This document shows positions 24,126 through 40,710 of a stretch of DNA of 64,000 nucleotides, piece after piece (the first letter of the stretch is position 1; each line of letters starts with the position of its first letter). The position numbers and the translations under genes were made by a program. The stretch covers positions 6,810,448-6,874,447 of the forward strand of contig BDGG01000002.1 of assembly GCA_001949185.1 (NCBI GenBank), read 5' to 3'. This stretch comes from Ramazzottius varieornatus. Its lineage: Eukaryota; Animalia; Tardigrada. Under the pieces are notes generated by a model. The model was given only the letters and a program-made list of their open reading frames with translations, had not been told where the DNA came from and made no database searches.

Positions 24126-27100
24126 ATGAGGTTTCTCTGGCTTGGATTACTTTTGCAACTGCGTAAGTATGGAGTTATGTCAAGTGAAAACGGCGTCCAC
24201 TTGTTTTAGGTCTTCAGTAGCACAGAATTTGGGCGGAAGAAATATCACGAGTGTTTTTACAGAATCCCTATTTGCTGCGTCTGTACCTGGTTCTTTACAA
24301 TGTTTCTGTGGCCAGCCGAGACCAGGTCAAGTCCTGCCTGCGCATGCCATCATCGATGCGATGCAGAACCAGAAAGCCGCATCAGCTGGACGATGGTGTT
24401 GGCAGGTAAGCTAAAAGACCATAAAACAGGAACAGCAAGAAAATCATGACCACTAACTCACATGACACCACGGGTTTGCTCGACAGGTGGCGCTCCAAGA
24501 TGAGACTGGAACGGTCTTCTGCTCCGCAACCCTGATCGACTCGTCTTACGCAATCACGCCCGCCCAGTGTGTTTTCGGGTAAGCTAAGGGAAAAACAATG
24601 CTATTGGTACACACAAATAATTTGTCTTCGTTTAATTTGACAGACGCAAAGCTAACACTACCTTCGTTCGACTGGGAGCCGTCGACATATTGGCACCCGG
24701 AAGCGACTCGTCAGTTGTTCCCGTTAGCGACCTGCTGATTCATCAGGGATACCTGAACATTGATTCGCGGAACGACTTTAACATTGCTGTCATTCGACTG
24801 TCCACTCCACTGGACTGCAACTCCAACGCTGTCTGCTTCGCTTGCCTGCCGGAAGCTAGTGCGCCACTGTCGAGCGAGTCTTCCTGCTTGGCCACTTCGT
24901 GGAACTTCCGCAAAGGTGCCGCGGACAAAGTTCCCTCTCAGCCTCTGCGAGACCGGCCTGCAACAATCATGGATCAGATGGAGTGTGAAATGAGACTACG
25001 AGCTGATAGGGCTATTGAGAACGATTACCATTTGTCCGACAACAAATTCTGTTTGATGGAAGCCCAAAATGGAACCACCTGCATGGTAAATATCAAACAA
25101 AAATAAATCACAAACGGCTCAAAATTTTGAATGAACACCCGGCTTATCGTACCATTGTGACTTTTTTAGGGCGATTTGGGTGATCCACTGGTCTGTCAGA
25201 ACACCAAAACCATGAATGCAACCAACGGTCGTTACGAAGTGGTCGGTTTGAATACACTGGGCTTTAGCTGCTTCAGAACCGACCTACCCAGTTTCTACAT
25301 TCGCGTTTCCAGCTTCGTCGATTGGATCAACAAAATCCGCGAACAACCAGGTCTCACCTCCCTTCCCTCCAGTTTCCAACCTGTGCGAACACAGCAAACC
25401 CAATCCACCGGAGACCTCATCGGCGTTATTGTCGCACCCGTCAGCTTGGTTATTCCCACCTCAGTTCCATCTGCTTCACCTGTCGTGGTTGCTTCTGCCA
25501 GTAACGAAGCTGCTGGACGCGCTTTCGTACCTGCTTCCTCCTCTACAAGTACCTCCACCACAACGTCCACAACCACCAAGACTACTACCACCACTACAAC
25601 ACCAAGTACCACCACAACGTCGACCACCACTGCACCACCATCCACCGCTTCGGCGGTCGTTCTCGTCGCTCCCGTTCTGATTGCTCCAGGTTCCGCGAAC
25701 CCCACCAACACTGGAGCCTTACCGACGATCGGCCACATGAGTCCGATGGGCATCCAGCGTTTCAATGGCGACGGGTCCCTCCTTCAGTTGGGAACCGATG
25801 GTTCCCTGCAAACACAACAAGGCTTACGCCCAATGACACCCATGTTGAAACAGGTGTCGCCAGGAGTGTTCCAAACAAACATTGCAGGCCAAACACACAC
25901 TATCGACCTCAACCGTGGTCCAGCCATTGTTCTGCCCACCGCAGCAGGTATTTTAGAACCAAACTGGCAAAATTTATTATTAGGAAAAATAGCGCGTCAG
26001 TAAAATCTAGGAGATCTGATTTACGTCAGAAAAAATTTCCAAAAAACAATATGAAAATGAAACATTTCATCAGCTTATCTAGGTAAATAGGTAGCGGCGT
26101 CCCATTATCCGGAACATTGACTCATAACCGTACTGTTCAGCAATCGAGATCCAGGTTGCTGGACCCCAAGGGCAAATTGGAACTGTTATTGTTGTAACAA
26201 ACCTTTGGGAACAAGATTCTGAAGATCGTTTCTCGTTTTCTGACCAGTGGTCAGACGGCCACGTCAGAAATATCTGCAGGTGTTTGAAGTTTCGATTGAC
26301 AATGTTGTGGCGTACCAATGGCGTCACACAGCATAGAGATATCGATGCATATGAGATTGTTTTAGCATTAAATCCCTCTGAGATGGACTTTTCAGGTGTC
26401 GGTGACACATGGACACCTGCGAGAATATCTTCCCGAAAGACCGAACGGTTTTTTGGGACTTTCAGCCACGGCGAGGTTCGGCAAACGTACCACACGATGC
26501 CTTTGGATATTGCAAACGACTTCAAGTCAAAAAAGTGTCGTTTGGAAACAACAATAATGTTCCAGAAATTGGGCCGCCGAAACCCAAGTATCAATTGAAC
26601 AACTTACGTAACTTTTTCTTCGTTGTAGGCAACCAACAACGGCAGAAGCGAAGTGGCACTGTCTTGGCAGTCAGCAGTGCAGGCTCGAATTCCGGTTCCA
26701 TCATCGGGCCCAACTCGAACATCAATCTCAACATCCCCATCGTGAACGTAGCAGCAAGTGACGTAGCCTACAACGCCCAAACAGGCAAGTTCGAGTTCCG
26801 TCTCCCGACTGGAGAAAGTGCCGTTAGTGCTGTCTCCTTTGCTCCTTCCACCCAAGAAGACATCAAGAACCAGATTATCGCTCAGCAAGACCGCATTCTG
26901 GCTCAAGTTCAACAAGCCAACAACAACATCCTCATTGCCATCACCAAGGCCTTCCCTGGCCAGTTCAGCGCTGGAACTGGAGCCTTTACCGGTATCAACA
27001 CCGGCTCTGGTTCATCTAGCGTCCTCACAAGCGCAAACTCGAAGTCTGGCTCCTCAGCTTCCAACGCAGGAAGAGTGTCGGGACTCGCGCCCAAAAATGT

Positions 27101-27437
27101 TGCTACGACCTCGCTGGAAGACGAAGACTCCCCGGAAGAAATCGTGCCGGCATCGCAGACTGCCATAGTGAGACCAGGTGTCGTGAGAGGTAACGCCAAT
27201 GCTGCTGGCTCAGGCGCACCGGGTGTCCGCAGCGGACCTACTGGTAACGGAGGATTCAAAGCCACCGTCAACAATAACACGCCATCGCAAGGATCGCTGA
27301 GGACTTCCTTAAACACAGCCAATAGTCAGAACAGTGCAGCCATCGGTTTCAAAGGTGACCGCGTTGTTGGAGAAACCAGGAACTCACCTGGATCTGCCAT
27401 GTCGTCCGTATCGGCATCATCGAACGGAAAAAGATAA
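24126..27437 (+). CDS. Secreted non-catalytic trypsin-fold serine protease homolog with Thr-rich linker, furin site and S/G/N-rich tail, 6 exons
   Basis: Exons 24126-24162, 24263-24405, 24487-24578, 24644-25085, 25170-25947, 26629-27437. Signal MRFLWLGLLLQL. S1-fold motifs WCWQVAL, FCSATLI, TPAQC, NIAVIRL, CFACLP, GDLGDPLVC, YIRVSSFVDWI. Last intron (G|GC) joins in frame to NQQRQKRS; an unspliced form would stop at 26003. Confidence 0.85.
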
Positions 27438-27648
27438 GCGTAATTATCACTTTGTTCAAAACTTTTCAAATGTTTTTGCCATGATTTGAGAGCTGATACG
27501 AATCCAATCAATATTGGCATGTCGAACAATGTTGATACTGAAGTTTCAAATATTCAAAAATAACAAGAATAAATCCTCTGGTTTAGCATGAATGAATTTC
27601 ATTGACCACAGACGACTCTAACGAAGCGTGAAAAAACCCTCAGTCAAT

Positions 27649-29455
27649 CTAGAAGCCAAGATCTCGCGCAAGATTTCGCAGTTGCGGGCTAATTTTCGTA
27701 ACCTTACCAGTCTCGACTGATGGGGTCTCGGCGTTACCATTTCTTGTGATTTTGGATGTTCCTTGCGACGCGACTTGTGCTCCTCCTGGAGGCAATGGCG
27801 GTACAAGATTATAGACCGCTCCATAGCCAGGACCGATAGTGTTACCATATGTTGCTCCATAACTCGGCCTGTGGAAAACAACTCGAAATACATAAAGTGC
27901 TCGATGGGTCGCATATGCGGATGAAATGATTGTGATTACCCATAGGTTGCCCCGTAAGTTGCGCCAAAGGACGGACCGATTGTGGGACCGACAGTCATCC
28001 CGATAGACGGACCTGGAAGATTCAAACCAATTACAGAGTCTTGTTTGCTTAAACAACGAATAAAGTACTGCCCTCCAGGTGATCAAATCGGATTAGCCCT
28101 TGTGGACACATTACTGCAGTTACACTTGACTTGTGCAATGCACACTACGTAAACCAATCAAATTTGATCACCTGCAGGGCAGTACTTCCTTCACTGCATG
28201 GAAACTGAAAACCACAGAACACATACCTATCGTCGGTCCGTAGGTAGTGCCGAACGTTGGCCTGTGAGAGGAGAAGCGTGCCTCAGTGATCTAGGTACCC
28301 TGAGGTAATCCTTACCTATGTCCACTTACCCAATTGTTGGTCCTAAGAGAATAAAATGTCAACGGAAATACGATCAGGACTGGCATACCAACGAAGCAGA
28401 GAATTAGTCTTTACCAACCGAAAGTTACTCCAAAAGTCGTTCCTAAAACAAAAACAGCAATTTTTGACAGTAAACTCTGTGAACGCCGCAACCGAAGACC
28501 TCTCAAAGAACTTACCGAAAGTATCTCCGTAAGTATATCCGTAGGAATTTCTGTAAGCAACGACACGGAAGTTTGACGAATGCTTCGTGCAAACAGTACC
28601 GTAAGGTACAGTATTCCGAATGTGCTAGAACACTCCATTTACCCGTATGTCGGTCCTGCAAGAGGGGATTTGGTACATGTAATGAAAAAGAATGAGACAA
28701 CTGTGCGAGAACCAAAGAACCTACCGATGGTTGGTCCAAACACAATCGCCTTCGTTTCACCTGCAACGCAGAACAGGGAGTTGGAATACTGGAGGGAACG
28801 TTTCGGGCATCGCAACCTCCCAATGGAACTTGGAGCTAGTTTGCTACATACCGTAAGTGGATCCATAACCAAGTGCCAACTGGAAACAAAAGCACAATTA
28901 TAAAGTACTCAGTGTGACGTCGGCAGTACTTCGAGAAAATGTTTACCGAACTGTTGTCTTTCAATATGTAGCTAGGGCCGGTATTTGTAATGTATTCCGG
29001 ACCCTTAATCACAATTTCCAGGAAGACGACGCTCGATTTGTTCAGTTGTTTCAATGTGGTTTCTAACACACCTAGAACGAAACAAGGGGAGTTGGCCCCG
29101 AAAATGAACCAGAAAGATTTTTGCAGTCATGAGTTTCAGTCTATAGCTTACTCAAGTTCCCCGTCGAGTAGTCCTTCGCGAGCAAGAGCACCGCACTCAG
29201 TGAATCCAGTCCAGTGGAAGAGACATTCCTCAGCAGGTCAGTGACGTTGATGTTGTCCGCCCGATTGTCAAGGGTAGCATTGGGCGTATTCGGCGGCTGG
29301 AAACTTGGCGAAGAGGAATTCGCCGCACTTCCGTTGATGTCCGGAAAGTCCCCTTGAGCACCTGCAATACAGAAAAACACGGCCACGCACGTGCAACAGA
29401 ACACCCTAAATACGGCTCTCAATCCAGACGGTAGATTGTTCGTCCGAGCAGGCAT
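27649..29455 (-). CDS. Micro-exon gene: secreted ~301-aa protein with 22 tandem G-x-(T/S)-(Y/F/I)-type tetrapeptides, 11 exons
   Basis: Exons 29455-29152, 29071-28947, 28879-28852, 28760-28725, 28655-28643, 28550-28516, 28442-28419, 28342-28330, 28261-28227, 28012-27940, 27868-27649. All are GT-AG and total 906 nt in one frame. Signal peptide ...VFRVFCCTCVAVFFCIAGAQG; 8 N-glycosylation sequons before the repeat. Confidence 0.85.
28068..28182. mobile_element. 115-bp MITE with TA flanks (Tc1/mariner-type) in intron 9 of the micro-exon gene
   Basis: TA|CTGCCCTCCAGGTGATCAAAT...ATTTGATCACCTGCAGGGCAG|TA: 21-bp TIR with one mismatch, TA on both sides. Confidence 0.7.
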
Positions 29456-29984
29456 CGTCGTTGGACAACTTCGGGACAGTCCTACAGAAAAAATGATACT
29501 GCGGTTGACAGTGCTCGTAAAAAAAAAAAACGAAAATCTTGCTTACAGTTGTTTTCGCAGATGGCTCAGAGATGGAGGAAAGAAAGCGTTGAGTTTCGCT
29601 GGAAAGTTTTCTGTCTTTCCCGTGAGGAACAGCACACGGCTTGGATTGGTCAGCAAGATTTTATGATCATGGACAAATAAAACTTTTTTCGTGCAGTCGA
29701 ATGAAAGAACAGATAGAACGTGAATGAAATGTAAGAAAGAATGAAAGTAAAGTCAAACGTGGAATAAAGGATCCATCGTAACTGGATAAAAAACAAGCAG
29801 ACAATGGATAAAACACGAAAGTAGGGCTACCTACACTTTGATAGTACACAGCCCGAAAGTAAAGAGGTTTGTTCTATCTACGGGAGAGAGTCGAGAATGA
29901 CCTCATTGAGTATAATAAAGCCTGGCTGAACATCAGCTACCTGAACAAACGAATGTGTACAGCTAGAAAAAACCGCCAGAAGAC

Positions 29985-32900
29985 TCAGCCACCACTGAAA
30001 GGGAATGCCGATGTGTAGTTGGTGGTATGGACATTAGCCGGCGTCTTGGGCGAGGCGCAGGTGAAAGCCGTGAAGTCTTCCTGCTGCCAGTGGTTGCGAT
30101 TCAGTGTCGGCTCCGAGTTGCTCCTCCATATCACAGGTATCCGTTCCATCGCATGCTGGAGCTGGTTGTGGATCTCGGTGAACTCTGGTCGGTCTTCTCG
30201 CTTGTAGCTCAGACAGAGCTCGAAGAGAGACTTCAGTGTCTTGGGTACTTCGTACACGGCGTTGTCAAGCTTCAGTTGAAGGAAACCACGACCCACACGG
30301 TACAAAATCTGCAAGAAAACCCCGATCAGATGAATAAAACGATAAGGAAGAAAAATGTTGTATCACCATATCACGGCTCATTCCTTCGTAAGGTAACTTC
30401 CCCGACAGAAGTTCGTACAAAACCACCCCGAAAGAGTACACATCGGACTTGGAACTGAAAGGGTGAGAGTCATCCTTATCCATGCGGATGACTTCCGGTG
30501 CCATCCACAGAATCGAGCCGGTGGTCTGCCGCGACTGTTGATGCGAGCCAGTCCACCTCGTCTTCACTGTCGCCAGACCGAAATCCCCAATCTTCACGCT
30601 GCATTCTTCGCTCAGAAAGATATCTGAGAAAAACAAGTCTCATGAAACCACTCCTCAATAGCTCAGTAGCTAATGGAAATCTTTCAACAAGCAACATACA
30701 GACGCATTCTGTCCACTTGCATACGATACACAAAACGTTCACCAAAGTATTCAGCGTGCAGGTGCATGTCGTAGTTCCAGCGTACGTTACTGTAGTGCTC
30801 CTAAATTAACGCGCACTCAACCACGTGGACAGTAAATGATGTCCGGCTGAGAGTCACACAGGCTACACCGATAACATCTGATCATACTGGACAACGATGG
30901 CTCATCACGTGGCTGAGTGCGCGGGAGCACTACAGTATTTTTTTCTGGAAAATTCGAGAAAACCCTCTTCAGGCTTGTTTTCTTACTGTTCGATTTGAGA
31001 TCGCGATGAATAATGTTGCGTGCATGTAAGTATGCCATTCCCTGTGCCACTTGTCGGAGTATATCAATCAGCGGTTTCATTTCGAAGCGGTATTCTTCAC
31101 AGTGGATCTTTTTGTACAAGCTGCTGCCTTCGCACCACTGAGTAACAATGGCCAATTGTGGCGACTGGCCCGGTTCACATTTGGATACACAGCCCATGAA
31201 CAAGAGGACATTATTGTGCCTCGTCTTCCTCAGAACTGCCACTTCGTTCTTGAAAGCCTGCATCTGCTCCAGCGTTGGGTCGTTTACGTTCAGCCTCTTG
31301 ATAGCCACCGGTCCGTACCAGTGACCACGATACACCGTTCCGAAAGAACCCGAACCAACTTTGGGACCGATGAGAATTTCACCCACTGGAATCTCCCAGT
31401 CTTCCATGCTTTCCCGCTGAACTCTCTAAAACAAGAGACACGTCAGTTTCCATGAGAATACACTGTCCAGAAAGCTCTGTCCTCACGACCCATCCAAAGA
31501 GACCGACCAGCAGATACGCTTCGTTCACTTTCACGTTCCTACATATTCAGAATCGACTGTTCACTACACACCGGAAGTATGTAGGTCCGTGCAGCGCTCG
31601 GTATCTAACTGGCCGATCCCTCGAAACTTACGCGTGTGTAAGTTCTGCGATGCCTTACCGATAGTTTGTAACCGTTGGAGGTAGTGAGGTTCAAGCTGGA
31701 ATCCGAAGACATCATGGTTCTTCCACTGGGCGTGGGTGACGAGTCCGGCTCGACTCGGGCTGGAGGAGTCGAAGGATCCGAATAGGGTGTCCGAGGGGTT
31801 CTTCCTGGTACCGGCAACAAGTTGTTTCCCGAGCCCACTTCTCCTGAAACTCATACGAGAGAATGAGAACTGATGAAATTTAAAAGGAATACTGCGGTAT
31901 ACAGTGCGATGATACCTTGTGCAGCTAGCTGTTGTGAAGCAATCAAATCGGTAAACGGCACAAAACGCAACGGTGCATAACGAGATGAGAAGGCGAAGTT
32001 AAAAGCAGGCCAGGGCAGTCCAGCCGTGGCAGGAGTTAAGATAACTAAGTGGGGGGGATGAACAACAGGCAAAGGTGAAACATAAAATCAAACAGTGCGG
32101 TAACGAATGACAATGCAACAGGCGCAAGAAGCACAACCAAAAACAGAGCAAAATAAAACCAGAAAGAAGTGCTTACTGGGCGAAATGGGTGGCCTCATCT
32201 TCTTGCCCAGCGAGGGAAGAGTCCCACTCTGTACAGCCGGAAGAGGTTCACAGACGGTCACGACGGTGTTGACATCGGGTGCTGAGGTGGAACGGCTTCG
32301 GCCCAGCTGGGGATCTTCGGGAATGACACTGGGTAGCCCGTAAGGAAGGAAGGCTTCCCCATTGGCATCGTTTGCGAGGAACCTGCAAGACCACCATTAA
32401 CAATGAGTGGTCGAGATAATCTATCCGAGTTTGTCTTCCGATTATCTCTAGTATCAAACCCTACATTTTGGCTTTCATCTGTACGTTGTCTTTGTGGATG
32501 GCAGGGATGCAGTACGTGCGAAACTGGTCCTTGCACTTGTCGTGCACCTTTACTTCACAGCGTTGGCAGCGCCATCCACTGAAAATTCTTCTGCTGCAAA
32601 CGGCACAGTTTGCAGACGTCAGGAAGGTCTTGGGTTGGAGGTTGTGCTCGGCTACACAGAGGGCGTCCCATACAGGCGCAATTTCTTCCACGACGATACG
32701 ATCCCCTTCGATACTGGCCACATCATCAGTCCATTTTACAGCAATCCTGGACAGAAAGCACGTTGACCACTTTTCCTGCCGGCCGGACATTAATAGTGAA
32801 AGTATTCAAGATCCATTTCACAGTAACTGGGTATCGGCGGCCCAATTTACAGCCCAAGTGTTTTGATTCAAAACGACCCTTTTTCGACATGAAGTTATGG

Positions 32901-39010: not shown

Positions 39011-40003
39011 TTAGGCTTCTTCTTCGGAGTCCGTTTCCGGTATGGAAGATCTTTGGTCCTGCAGAAACTCGAACAAGTTCCGCCCATTCGTGGAAAACCC
39101 ACTGTTAGCGAAGTCGGCTGGAATTTCGTACTGGCGCATGACGCTTGGTTGGACTGCGGTGGGTTCCCTTATGACTCGGAGTAGCTCATCTGTAGGTACC
39201 GACTCAGCACTTCGCAGTTCCTCCCATACGAAAAGACCCGGATCCGTCACTTTGTCGAACGGGTTGAAGTCCACAAGGCGAAAGTGTTCTACAGTGGTCG
39301 CGAACGTAACGATATCGAAGACGTAATCGTTAAGCGGAAACCTATGTTGAATGAACCTCTCGAAGAAACTTTTGATACGTACAGCTAGATCTTGGGAATC
39401 AACTAGATTATGAGCATAAAAGTCGGAGCAATTTCTTTGCGAAATTCCAACTAGGCGGTTATCTTTGACGAAGCAGCGATATTCCCATCCAGGACTAAAT
39501 TCCATCCACCGACGCAGTACCATTTCGTACCGGATGAACCCACGTTCACGGATGCTGTCCGACAGATCGTACTGGATCAGCGAGGAAGCTTTAAGCAGGA
39601 GCAACACGTCCGTGAGAGAAGTGCACTTGAGTTGCCTGTTGGGAAGTATCCATGAGGCGTCACGCGGAGATGTAAAGTTCAGCTTGGGAAACACTTGACC
39701 ACCGAGTTTCGCGACAGCCTTCTCGACTTTTGACTTCAAGTTGGTAACCCAGGTATAAACTTCTTCCTCCTCTTCATCCTCCGAACTCCAGTCCGGAGAT
39801 TGGACGTTTTCCTGGTTGCCATGAGCATAATTCGCGGAATCCGAAGTGTGAGAGTCCAGTCCCGCAGGAAGCTGCATTCCATCTTCCCGCAGGAAAGCCA
39901 CGACAGCGTCTTCCAGTGGGATGATCTCGCTCGGGAATGTAACATGCTTGAACTTTGGATACCACGATGAGAAACAGAAGCTGTGTAACTCGTTTGGTAT
40001 CAT
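39011..40003 (-). CDS. CDC123: Cell division cycle protein 123 (eIF2 assembly factor, D123 family), intronless
   Basis: FSSWYPKF, FPKLNFTSPRDASWI, LLLKASS, EYRCFVKDNRLVGISQR, YVFDI, LVDFNPF...TDPGLFVWEEL; ATG at 40003. Confidence 0.92.
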   Translation of the reverse strand: MIPNELHSFCFSSWYPKFKHVTFPSEIIPLEDAVVAFLREDGMQLPAGLDSHTSDSANYAHGNQENVQSPDWSSEDEEEEEVYTWVTNLKSKVEKAVAKLGGQVFPKLNFTSPRDASWILPNRQLKCTSLTDVLLLLKASSLIQYDLSDSIRERGFIRYEMVLRRWMEFSPGWEYRCFVKDNRLVGISQRNCSDFYAHNLVDSQDLAVRIKSFFERFIQHRFPLNDYVFDIVTFATTVEHFRLVDFNPFDKVTDPGLFVWEELRSAESVPTDELLRVIREPTAVQPSVMRQYEIPADFANSGFSTNGRNLFEFLQDQRSSIPETDSEEEA

Positions 40004-40710
40004 GGCTGCAGAGTGCAGAATGCTTGTGACCGGAAGTCGCACAACGGATGAAAGTCAGTCGTCTCCAGTCTTCGCGGTCATCCTCTCCCTGACTCCCCGA
40101 TTTCGCTGCGACGCTGCGTCTTCTGGCAGAGGTGGGGTGTAGGTCTGGAGGAACAAGTCGGGCCGGGAAGAAGAAATGCGCAGTGGAAGGTGGGAACGAG
40201 TGAGTCGACTGACTGGCTGACGAAATAACATCAGGCCGAGCGAAGCAAGGCCCTTCTAAGTCTGTAGATTTCAATGGACGATCAGATTCTTCGAGCTTTC
40301 AGATATCGCAAACACAGTACTGAAAAAAGACACGCCACTTGATCGGGGCGATTAAAAATTTTACTGGGGAACCGTACTGTGAGTCACAAGTAAAAGTGCT
40401 CACTCTACAATGGTTTGCCTTCTTTGCTCGGCCTTTCCAGTGGTCAGAACCACTAGCTAGTTATTACTTCGTCTGTAAATACCATGACGTAACAAACGAC
40501 TGACCGACATCTGGCGATTTTTCTCACTCCCGAATTGACGTTTCGAATCCGTTCATGACTGTGCGCACTTTGCAAAATTGTATGAAATCTTACTGCTACT
40601 TACAGTGTTCTTTTGCAGGTGAAGAGGGGAAGAAAGATCTTTCAGGTCCGGAGTAGATCGCCATTACGCCACCTGATTTCACGTAGGCTGCGCTTCGCTG
40701 CTGCCGATAA

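What the first reader, a model, noticed from the sequence alone, without database searches (positions are those of the whole stretch)
27649..29455. Hidden micro-exon gene encoding a secreted protein with 22 uninterrupted Gly-initiated tetrapeptides
Seen: exons of 28, 36, 13, 35, 24, 13, 35 and 73 bp splice through canonical GT-AG sites into GPTI GPTY GNSY GYTY GDTF GTTF GVTF GPTI GPTF GTTY GPTI GPSI GMTV GPTI GPSF GATY GATY GPSY GATY GNTI GPGY GAVY. The 4-residue register is kept across every junction, which is very unlikely by chance. Upstream are a signal peptide and a region with 8 N-glycosylation sequons. I recognise no family, and ORF finders would miss or fragment it. Inference: the Gly/Thr/aromatic periodicity suggests a beta-solenoid or cross-beta fibre with Thr and aromatic ladders, so candidates are an ice-binding, cuticle/eggshell or self-assembling protective protein.
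Basis: partly seen in the sequence, partly recalled or inferred. Interest (0 to 1): 0.85.

Follow-up and report, generated by a model that had tools for sequence, protein, structure and literature searches.

The report
Mis-annotated tardigrade micro-exon repeat-protein gene
A real, transcribed gene of the tardigrade Ramazzottius varieornatus, built partly from exons as short as 13 bases, encodes a secreted glycoprotein with 22 perfect four-residue Gly-x-Thr-aromatic repeats; public annotation splits it into two truncated "hypothetical proteins", and its function (probably a self-associating extracellular matrix protein) is still untested.

Summary
On the minus strand, 11 coding exons join through GT-AG introns into a 906-nt CDS (301 aa). 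It has a signal-peptide-like N-terminus, 8 N-x-S/T sequons and 22 uninterrupted G-x-[T/S]-[Y/I/F/V] units. Intron-less contigs from three separate studies carry every junction, including both 13-nt exons. A genomic contig keeps the introns.

The genome is Ramazzottius varieornatus. The public annotation splits the gene into RvY_05672 (192 aa, reads into intron 4) and RvY_05671 (92 aa, starts inside exon 10). Exons 5-9 are in neither model.

The gene is single-copy. Fragments of an orthologue exist in one unnamed ENA organism. Its last five repeat units are identical and the last intron site appears conserved.

No Pfam, PDB or ESM-Atlas family matches. AlphaFold2 on the referable fragments gave no ordered structure, so the beta-solenoid or ice-binding idea has no support, but it is not excluded.

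Best reading: a lineage-restricted secreted, self-associating Gly/Thr/Tyr-rich matrix protein. Another first-stage note of this scan (s1-804798) covers the same stretch.

The parts
29546..29612 (-). 5'UTR exon (non-coding). The upstream limit is approximate: it is the end of the X1 contig.
   Evidence: the 29480->29546 joint skips 65 nt with CT..AC ends in X1 and X2. The X7 loose end at 29481 reads the first bases of this exon. The spliced 92-nt UTR has no ATG.
29152..29455 (-). Coding exon 1 (304 nt): start codon at 29455, signal-peptide-like residues 1-33 (29357-29455), and 6 of the 8 N-glycosylation sequons.
   Evidence: RNA contigs cover 29150-29480. It is 42% identical to the orthologue fragments P0002/P0006, with the hydrophobic core and the NVT, NVS and NLS sequons conserved.
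28947..29071 (-). Coding exon 2 (125 nt), the rest of the non-repetitive N-terminal region, with 2 sequons.
28852..28879 (-). Coding exon 3, a 28-nt micro-exon.
   Evidence: Joints 28758->28850 and 28879->28947 in X1, X2 and X7.
28725..28760 (-). Coding exon 4, a 36-nt micro-exon. The perfect tetrapeptide array begins at 28737.
   Evidence: The public model RvY_05672 fails after this exon by reading into intron 4.
28643..28655 (-). Coding exon 5, a 13-nt micro-exon.
   Evidence: tables 5 and 5c: between 28555 and 28724 the contigs of X1, X2 and X7 carry letters that add up to the 13-nt exon once the flanking letters absorbed by the aligner are counted.
28516..28550 (-). Coding exon 6 (35 nt).
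28419..28442 (-). Coding exon 7 (24 nt).
28330..28342 (-). Coding exon 8, a 13-nt micro-exon.
   Evidence: table 5c: 11 letters lie between 28262 and 28418 in X1, X2 and X7. With one absorbed letter on each side they equal window 28330-28342.
28227..28261 (-). Coding exon 9 (35 nt).
28058..28192 (.). MITE-like insertion inside intron 9, with 37-nt inverted arms. It explains why this intron is 214 nt and the others 67-92 nt.
   Evidence: arms 28058-28094 and 28156-28192, 86% complementary. (at least 12 other copies in the genome at 73-81% identity).
27940..28012 (-). Coding exon 10 (73 nt). The public model RvY_05671 starts at a Met inside it.
27649..27868 (-). Coding exon 11 (220 nt): the last 5 units (the array ends at 27811), a 53-residue non-repetitive tail, and the stop codon at 27649-27651.
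   Evidence: The orthologue fragments P0009/P0010 are 68% identical, with the 5 units identical.

Best explanation
This is one real, expressed, single-copy gene of the tardigrade Ramazzottius varieornatus. It has 12 exons (1 UTR and 11 coding), and seven coding exons are only 13-36 nt long. GenBank splits it into two truncated hypothetical proteins, RvY_05672 and RvY_05671.

Shown: the splicing, the 301-aa reading frame, the array, the single copy, and an orthologue in one other organism.

Inferred from sequence: the protein enters the ER and is cleaved after about A33. It is N-glycosylated on its roughly 110-residue N-terminal region (8 sequons, Cys-free when mature) and is secreted.

Inferred mechanism: the almost uncharged 88-residue G-x-T/S-aromatic/aliphatic array places a 'sticker' (10 Tyr, 5 Phe, 6 Ile, 1 Val) at every fourth residue, between Gly and Pro turn-formers. 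Such an array would be flexible or turn-rich rather than globular. It would self-associate into an extracellular matrix such as cuticle, egg shell or feeding apparatus, and its Tyr residues could be fixed by oxidative cross-linking, as in resilin and other Gly/Tyr-rich structural proteins.
For: Gene and splicing. Spliced contigs from 3 studies carry all junctions and both 13-nt exons, and the DNA-like contig X18 is unspliced.

Identity and mis-annotation.

Secretion signals. The only strongly hydrophobic stretch is residues 14-35, with A-G-A before Q34. There are 8 sequons, and the mature chain has no Cys. The orthologue keeps the hydrophobic N-terminus and three sequons.

Selection on the array: the 12-nt units are only 54% identical at the DNA level and no two are identical. 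All four Gly codons and all four Thr codons are used. So the array is old and is maintained at the protein level. The last 5 units are 100% identical in the orthologue, while its tail has diverged. The intron 10 site is conserved.

Structural-protein flavour: the array is 26% G, 25% T+S, 18% Y+F and 11% P, with a single charged residue. The only Pfam hints are sub-threshold composition matches to keratin-associated high-Gly/Tyr matrix protein and the prion octapeptide. S/T-Y-G-A/P strings resemble the YGAP core of resilin A-repeats, which cross-link through dityrosine (PMC3233583). There is no confident fold.
Against: No localisation, stage-specific expression or biochemistry is available. The functional part rests on composition and analogy alone. 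There is no chitin-binding or other matrix domain. Low pLDDT from a 2-sequence alignment of a fragment does not prove disorder. The hydrophobic N-terminus could be a signal anchor rather than a cleaved signal peptide. The joined 301-aa model was never searched or folded, so residues 165-209 were not covered by any tool.
Confidence: 0.55

Rival explanations
1. Ice-binding or water-ordering protein. The array folds into a regular beta-solenoid or cross-beta fibre with Thr and Tyr ladders and binds ice or inhibits recrystallisation.
For: Thr or Ser sits at position 3 in 20 of 22 units and an aromatic or aliphatic residue at position 4 in every unit. The composition (G, T, Y, S, A) recalls bacterial ice-nucleation repeats and Thr-rich insect antifreezes (from memory, not tested). 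The host is a freeze- and desiccation-tolerant tardigrade.
Against: AlphaFold2 gives no strands and pLDDT below 50 over the 9.5 units that could be folded. The ESM Atlas models have pLDDT 0.33-0.36. No period above 4 marks a coil length, there is no T-x-T motif, Pro is in 45% of units, and there are no Cys or capping elements. There is no sequence match to any solved ice-binding protein.
Confidence: 0.07
2. Mucin-like or antifreeze-glycoprotein-like O-glycoprotein. The regularly spaced Thr/Ser next to Pro/Ala are O-glycosylated, giving a hydrated, lubricating or protective surface coat rather than a cross-linked solid.
For: P-T or A-T dipeptides recur every 4 residues. The protein is predicted to be secreted and heavily N-glycosylated. 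Fish antifreeze glycoproteins are (A-A/P-T)n (from memory).
Against: A bulky aromatic or aliphatic residue follows every Thr, which is unlike mucins or AFGPs. The period is 4, not 3. O-glycosylation cannot be tested here.
Confidence: 0.12
3. Precursor of Gly/Tyr-rich antimicrobial or signalling peptides, as in the nematode NLP/CNC type.
For: Gly/Tyr-rich secreted peptides are known immune effectors in other ecdysozoans (from memory). Other windows of this genome carry candidate glycine-rich peptide genes (unchecked notes).
Against: There are no dibasic or furin sites within or flanking the array, and a large N-glycosylated N-terminal region precedes it. At 301 aa it is much longer than such precursors.
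Confidence: 0.04
4. The transcript is real, but the repeat protein has no selected function: a lineage-specific low-complexity gene drifting neutrally.
For: It is an orphan, with relatives in only one other organism in 1.8 billion representative proteins. No fold is predicted.
Against: The motif is kept at the protein level while the DNA units have diverged to 54% identity. The five comparable units are identical in an orthologue whose exon 1 is only 42% identical. All micro-exons are faithfully spliced in three studies.
Confidence: 0.05

Closest known systems
Resilin / pro-resilin repeat domains (arthropod elastic cuticle protein)
   Same: Both are secreted, Gly/Pro/Ser/Thr/Tyr-rich short tandem repeats. 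S/T-Y-G-A/P strings resemble the YGAP core of the A-repeat. The regularly spaced Tyr is suitable for dityrosine cross-links (PMC3233583). Both lack a predicted stable fold.
   Different: The repeat unit is 4 residues rather than 13-15. There is no R&R chitin-binding domain. Half of the 'sticker' positions are Ile/Phe, not Tyr. There is no detectable homology.
High-glycine/tyrosine matrix proteins (keratin-associated proteins PF11759; also lamprin, chorion arms and suckerin Gly/Tyr modules, the latter from memory)
   Same: These are low-complexity Gly plus aromatic repeats that pack between or into structural fibres. P0008 gives a weak composition-level Pfam hit to KRTAP (E 0.051).
   Different: The score of 14.6 bits is below the 21.1-bit cut-off. 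KRTAPs are intracellular vertebrate hair proteins. The strict G-x-T-aromatic register and the N-glycosylated N-terminal region are not shared.
Schistosome micro-exon genes (MEGs)
   Same: Both encode signal-peptide-bearing secreted proteins. Most internal coding exons are micro-exons (seven of 13-36 nt) between longer first and last exons.
   Different: MEG micro-exons are symmetric, with lengths that are multiples of 3, which allows combinatorial skipping (from memory). Here only the 36- and 24-nt exons are symmetric, and skipping a 13-, 28- or 35-nt exon would shift the frame. Contigs show only full inclusion. The phylum differs and there is no homology.
Beta-solenoid ice-binding proteins (insect antifreeze proteins, bacterial ice-nucleation protein repeats)
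   Same: Both have short Thr-rich tandem repeats with regularly placed Tyr or aliphatic residues.
   Different: There is no T-x-T motif, no coil-length super-period, no disulfides and no predicted beta structure. There is no sequence match to solved structures.

Membership tests
Schistosome-type micro-exon genes (MEG) | Most of the CDS lies in micro-exons of 36 nt or less, flanked by longer terminal exons, and there is a signal peptide. | tested here: met
   Seven of 11 coding exons are 13-36 nt. The terminal coding exons are 304 and 220 nt, and the N-terminus is hydrophobic. By length, however, the micro-exons hold only 184 of 906 nt.
Schistosome-type micro-exon genes (MEG) | Micro-exons are symmetric (lengths are multiples of 3), so that skipping keeps the frame. 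| tested here: not met
   The lengths are 28, 36, 13, 35, 24, 13 and 35 nt. Only 36 and 24 are multiples of 3, and the intron phases are 1,1,2,1,1,2,1,2.
Resilin / R&R cuticular proteins | A Rebers-Riddiford chitin-binding domain (Pfam PF00379). | tested here: not met
   No Pfam hit for exon 1, P0001 (residues 1-164) or P0008 (residues 210-301) even at E<=10. The unscanned residues 165-209 are pure tetrapeptide units.
Resilin / R&R cuticular proteins | Tandem Gly/Pro/Tyr repeats with a YGAP-type core, cross-linked by dityrosine. | tested here: inconclusive
   S/T-Y-G-A/P strings are present, but the unit length differs. Cross-linking cannot be tested in silico.
Keratin-associated matrix, high Gly-Tyr (PF11759) | A Pfam score above the gathering threshold. 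| tested here: not met
   14.6 bits against a cut-off of 21.1, E 0.051.
Beta-solenoid ice-binding proteins | A regular coil-length repeat (12 or more residues) with a flat T-x-T or similar ladder, and a predicted or solved beta-helix. | tested here: inconclusive
   No period above 4 and no T-x-T motif. AF2 of the fragment with 9.5 units gave pLDDT below 50 and no strands. The full array was not folded.
Beta-solenoid ice-binding proteins | Ice-binding activity (thermal hysteresis or recrystallisation inhibition). | not testable with these tools
   Needs a bench assay.
Collagen-like proteins | A G-x-y triplet period. | tested here: not met
   Gly recurs every 4th residue, 22 of 22.

The most novel reading that the evidence does not exclude
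The G-x-T-aromatic array, possibly O-glycosylated, adopts an ordered four-residue-period assembly: a Thr/Tyr-laddered fibre or a very tight solenoid. This would be a fold with no solved precedent. It would act as a tardigrade-specific ice- or water-structuring, or vitrifying, surface protein that contributes to freeze or desiccation tolerance of the cuticle or egg.
Probability: 0.07. Interest if true: 0.85.

Novelty: new variant of a known kind. Interest (0 to 1): 0.42.

Why it matters
Three points.

1. Annotation. Two GenBank/UniProt entries (GAU93786.1 and GAU93785.1) are halves of one gene. Exons 5-9 are in neither entry, and the central part of the repeat array is absent from the protein collections searched here. 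Proteomic and transcriptomic analyses that use these models will mis-assign or miss the protein.

2. Gene structure. Two 13-nt and five 24-36-nt exons are spliced constitutively in a compact genome with introns of about 70 nt. Every intron in the array sits inside a Gly codon. This makes a clean natural case for studying micro-exon definition and intron placement in repeats.

3. Biology. This is a lineage-restricted secreted protein with an unusually strict tetrapeptide register kept by selection. It is a candidate component of tardigrade extracellular material (cuticle, egg shell or feeding apparatus), whose protein make-up is largely unknown. It is also a possible new sequence design for protein-based materials.

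Nothing here shows a role in extremotolerance.

Tried and rejected
- **Paralogues in the same genome.** I searched with exon 1, exon 11 and P0008 as proteins, with a two-unit degenerate DNA pattern, and with a 13-nt-exon-plus-splice-site pattern. Only the gene itself was found. Paralogues broken into micro-exons with other sequences could still escape these searches.
- **Distant homologues.**
  - HMMER with exon 1 against 1.84 billion representatives gave the gene's own fragment, one orthologue fragment, and three low-complexity chance hits.
  - Three word-index searches (P0001, P0002, exon 11) gave only fragments of this gene and its orthologue.
  - Pfam found nothing above threshold.
  - PDB sequences gave only chance hits at E>0.01 to designed 'Pizza' propellers, and these matched the tail, not the repeats.
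  - The ESM Atlas gave no usable hit.
- **Orthologue DNA.** A JGI metagenome scan by profile and one by degenerate pattern gave only chance matches. Conservation of the micro-exons in another species therefore could not be checked, apart from the last intron.
- **Structure.** AF2 of P0008+P0009 gave pLDDT 49, and AF2 of P0001 gave pLDDT 36. Both are too poor for a fold search, which I did not run.
- **Joined model.** It was assembled only inside local scripts from window.fa, to check frame, composition and codons.
- **Intron duplication.** Pairwise intron alignments gave no score clearly above the shuffled range (best 16 against a shuffled maximum of 14, mean 8). The 13+35-nt exon pairs are therefore not recent exon-intron duplications.
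- **Expression data in papers.** The gene ids RvY_05672 and RvY_05671 appear in no held full text. They also appear in none of the supplements checked for three tardigrade transcriptome papers.
- **Depth.** Contig depths were not used to rank expression.

Full report
**1. What is in the sequence**

On the minus strand of window 27649-29455, eleven coding exons are each bounded by AG and GT. Their lengths are 304, 125, 28, 36, 13, 35, 24, 13, 35, 73 and 220 nt. They join into a 906-nt open frame of 301 codons.

The product has four parts:
- A hydrophobic N-terminus. The only strongly hydrophobic stretch is residues 14-35, with small residues at -3/-1 before Q34.
- A non-repetitive region of about 110 residues with eight N-x-S/T sequons.
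- An array of 22 uninterrupted tetrapeptides at residues 161-248. Position 1 is Gly in 22/22. Position 2 is Pro in 10 and Ala in 4. Position 3 is Thr in 16 and Ser in 4. Position 4 is Tyr in 10, Ile in 6, Phe in 5 and Val in 1. Three degenerate units precede it in the same register.
- A 53-residue tail.

The mature chain has no Cys, and the array has one charged residue. All eight introns inside the repeat region split Gly codons, in phases 1,1,2,1,1,2,1,2.

**2. Is it real?**

Yes. I laid contigs of four public runs on window 27400-29700.
- Three RNA-like runs from three different studies (X1, X2, X7) each hold one contig that skips exactly the predicted introns. All skips have CT..AC ends on the + strand, which is GT..AG on the gene's strand.
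- Both 13-nt exons appear as the letters that lie between two joints. With the letters absorbed by the aligner on either side, they add up to the full 13 nt.
- The fourth run (X18) holds an unspliced contig over 28194-29645, which is the genomic form.

The runs were labelled only 'RNA?'. The intron-less contigs with canonical intron ends are what show that they come from spliced RNA.

The same contigs add a 65-nt intron in the 5'UTR (29481-29545) and a UTR exon (29546 to about 29612). The spliced UTR has no upstream ATG. Contigs cannot show rare isoforms, so alternative skipping is neither shown nor excluded.

**3. Whose gene, and how is it annotated?**

The assembly has 55.84 Mb in 200 contigs.
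- The HMMER search with exon 1 returned a 192-aa public protein, GAU93786.1, 'hypothetical protein RvY_05672 [Ramazzottius varieornatus]'. It is correct through exon 4, then reads into intron 4 and stops.
- The search with exon 11 returned GAU93785.1, 'hypothetical protein RvY_05671', 92 aa. It begins at a Met inside exon 10.

The public annotation therefore cuts the gene in two. Exons 5-9 are in neither model. No 301-aa model turned up among candidates of 105-336 aa.

**4. Relatives**
- The gene is single-copy in its genome.
- Outside it, only fragments from short ENA contigs of one unnamed organism were found. These are an exon-1 ORF (P0002/P0006, 42% identity) and an exon-11 ORF (P0009/P0010, 68% identity).
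- In the exon-11 fragment the five repeat units are identical to the window's, while the tail has diverged.
- The residues just upstream read like the end of an intron (…FFHR, against …VFHR in the window's own intron 10). The last intron site therefore appears conserved.
- Within the window's gene, the 12-nt units are only 54% identical to one another and no two are the same. All four Gly codons and all four Thr codons are used. The introns are not alignable with each other.

The array is therefore old and is kept at the protein level. It is not a recent DNA expansion.

**5. Family and fold**
- Pfam gives nothing above threshold. The best hits are composition-level matches of the repeats to the prion octapeptide and to high-Gly/Tyr keratin-associated matrix protein, both below their cut-offs.
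- PDB sequences give only chance hits, to the tail.
- The ESM Atlas holds both public fragments with poor models (pLDDT 0.33 and 0.36) and no usable neighbours.
- AlphaFold2 on P0008+P0009 (the last 9.5 units plus the tail) gave mean pLDDT 49, below 50 across the repeats. It showed no strands and one short helix in the conserved C-terminal end.
- AlphaFold2 on P0001 gave pLDDT 36.

It was built only inside local scripts, to check frame, composition and codons. Residues 165-209 were therefore never searched or folded, and the solenoid idea was tested only on a fragment with a two-row alignment.

**6. Most likely mechanism**

Shown:
- a spliced mRNA;
- a 301-aa frame;
- an N-terminus with the features of a cleavable signal peptide;
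- eight sequons;
- a strict, nearly uncharged tetrapeptide array that is conserved at the protein level.

Inferred:
- The protein is secreted and N-glycosylated.
- The array has a hydrophobic or aromatic 'sticker' every fourth residue between Gly and Pro/Ala/Thr. It behaves as a flexible, turn-rich, self-associating low-complexity domain.
- It builds or fills an extracellular matrix, and its ten Tyr residues are available for oxidative cross-linking.

The nearest functional analogues are resilin repeat domains and other Gly/Tyr-rich structural proteins. The YGAP core and dityrosine cross-links of resilin are described in PMC3233583. This protein is not a member of any of those families. It has no chitin-binding domain, a different unit length, and no homology.

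I put about 0.55 on this reading. The gene model itself I put above 0.95.

**7. Rivals**
- Ice-binding solenoid, about 0.07. Against it: no super-period, no T-x-T motif, Pro in 45% of units, and no predicted strands. It is not excluded.
- O-glycosylated mucin-like or AFGP-like coat, about 0.12.
- Peptide precursor, about 0.04. There are no processing sites.
- A functionless orphan, about 0.05. The protein-level conservation argues against it.

Compared with schistosome micro-exon genes, the gene shares micro-exons and a signal peptide. It fails the defining symmetry, because most of its micro-exons are not multiples of three.

**8. Verdict**

This is a new, lineage-restricted variant of a known kind, the secreted Gly/Tyr-rich repeat protein. 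It has an unusual micro-exon architecture and comes with a concrete annotation correction. Another first-stage note of this scan (s1-804798) covers the same stretch and makes the point about Gly-codon introns, which I verified.

Noticed in passing
window 28058-28192 (inside intron 9 of the gene): An element of about 135 nt with 37-nt inverted terminal arms (86% complementary). At least 12 other copies, at 73-81% identity, lie on six other contigs of the genome. It looks like a MITE-like dispersed repeat, and it explains why this intron is 214 nt while the others are 67-92 nt.
   Followed up: yes
window 29646 and 29985-32790 (minus strand): The upstream gene on the same strand is a RAF/KSR-like kinase, with ORF pieces for a C1 zinc-finger and a protein-kinase domain. 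A contig with a poly(T) loose end places its poly(A) site at 29646. That is only about 33 nt from the first UTR exon of the repeat-protein gene. One 4.9-kb contig (X2) runs through both genes, which could be read-through or an assembly merge.
   Followed up: partly
window 26409-27437 (+) and 25176-26003 (+): A convergent Ser-rich 342-aa ORF has no Pfam hit. It is preceded by an ORF with a trypsin C-terminal match and a weak mucin-like match. The RNA contigs of the repeat-protein gene run past 27400 into the end of this ORF. So either the two 3' ends overlap or unstranded contigs merged them.
   Followed up: no
window 27548-27761 and 29315-29419: Run X7 (another study, same species label) differs from the window at 95-99% identity. 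Of the eight listed differences that fall in the CDS, four are synonymous and four are not (R13G, G265E, I288T, D298G). None is listed inside the perfect array, and all splice junctions are the same. This is probably a different strain or lineage.
   Followed up: partly
window 39011-40042 (-): An uninterrupted 343-aa ORF gives a full-length match to Pfam D123, the cell-division-cycle protein 123 family (E 3e-80). This is an ordinary housekeeping gene.
   Followed up: no
Sequencing-run table: Several RNA-like runs with the same species label hold next to none of the gene's sampled words: X21 from the same 2016 study as X2/X3, and X22-X24 from a 2021 study. This hints at stage- or condition-specific expression, but it is no proof of absence.
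   Followed up: no
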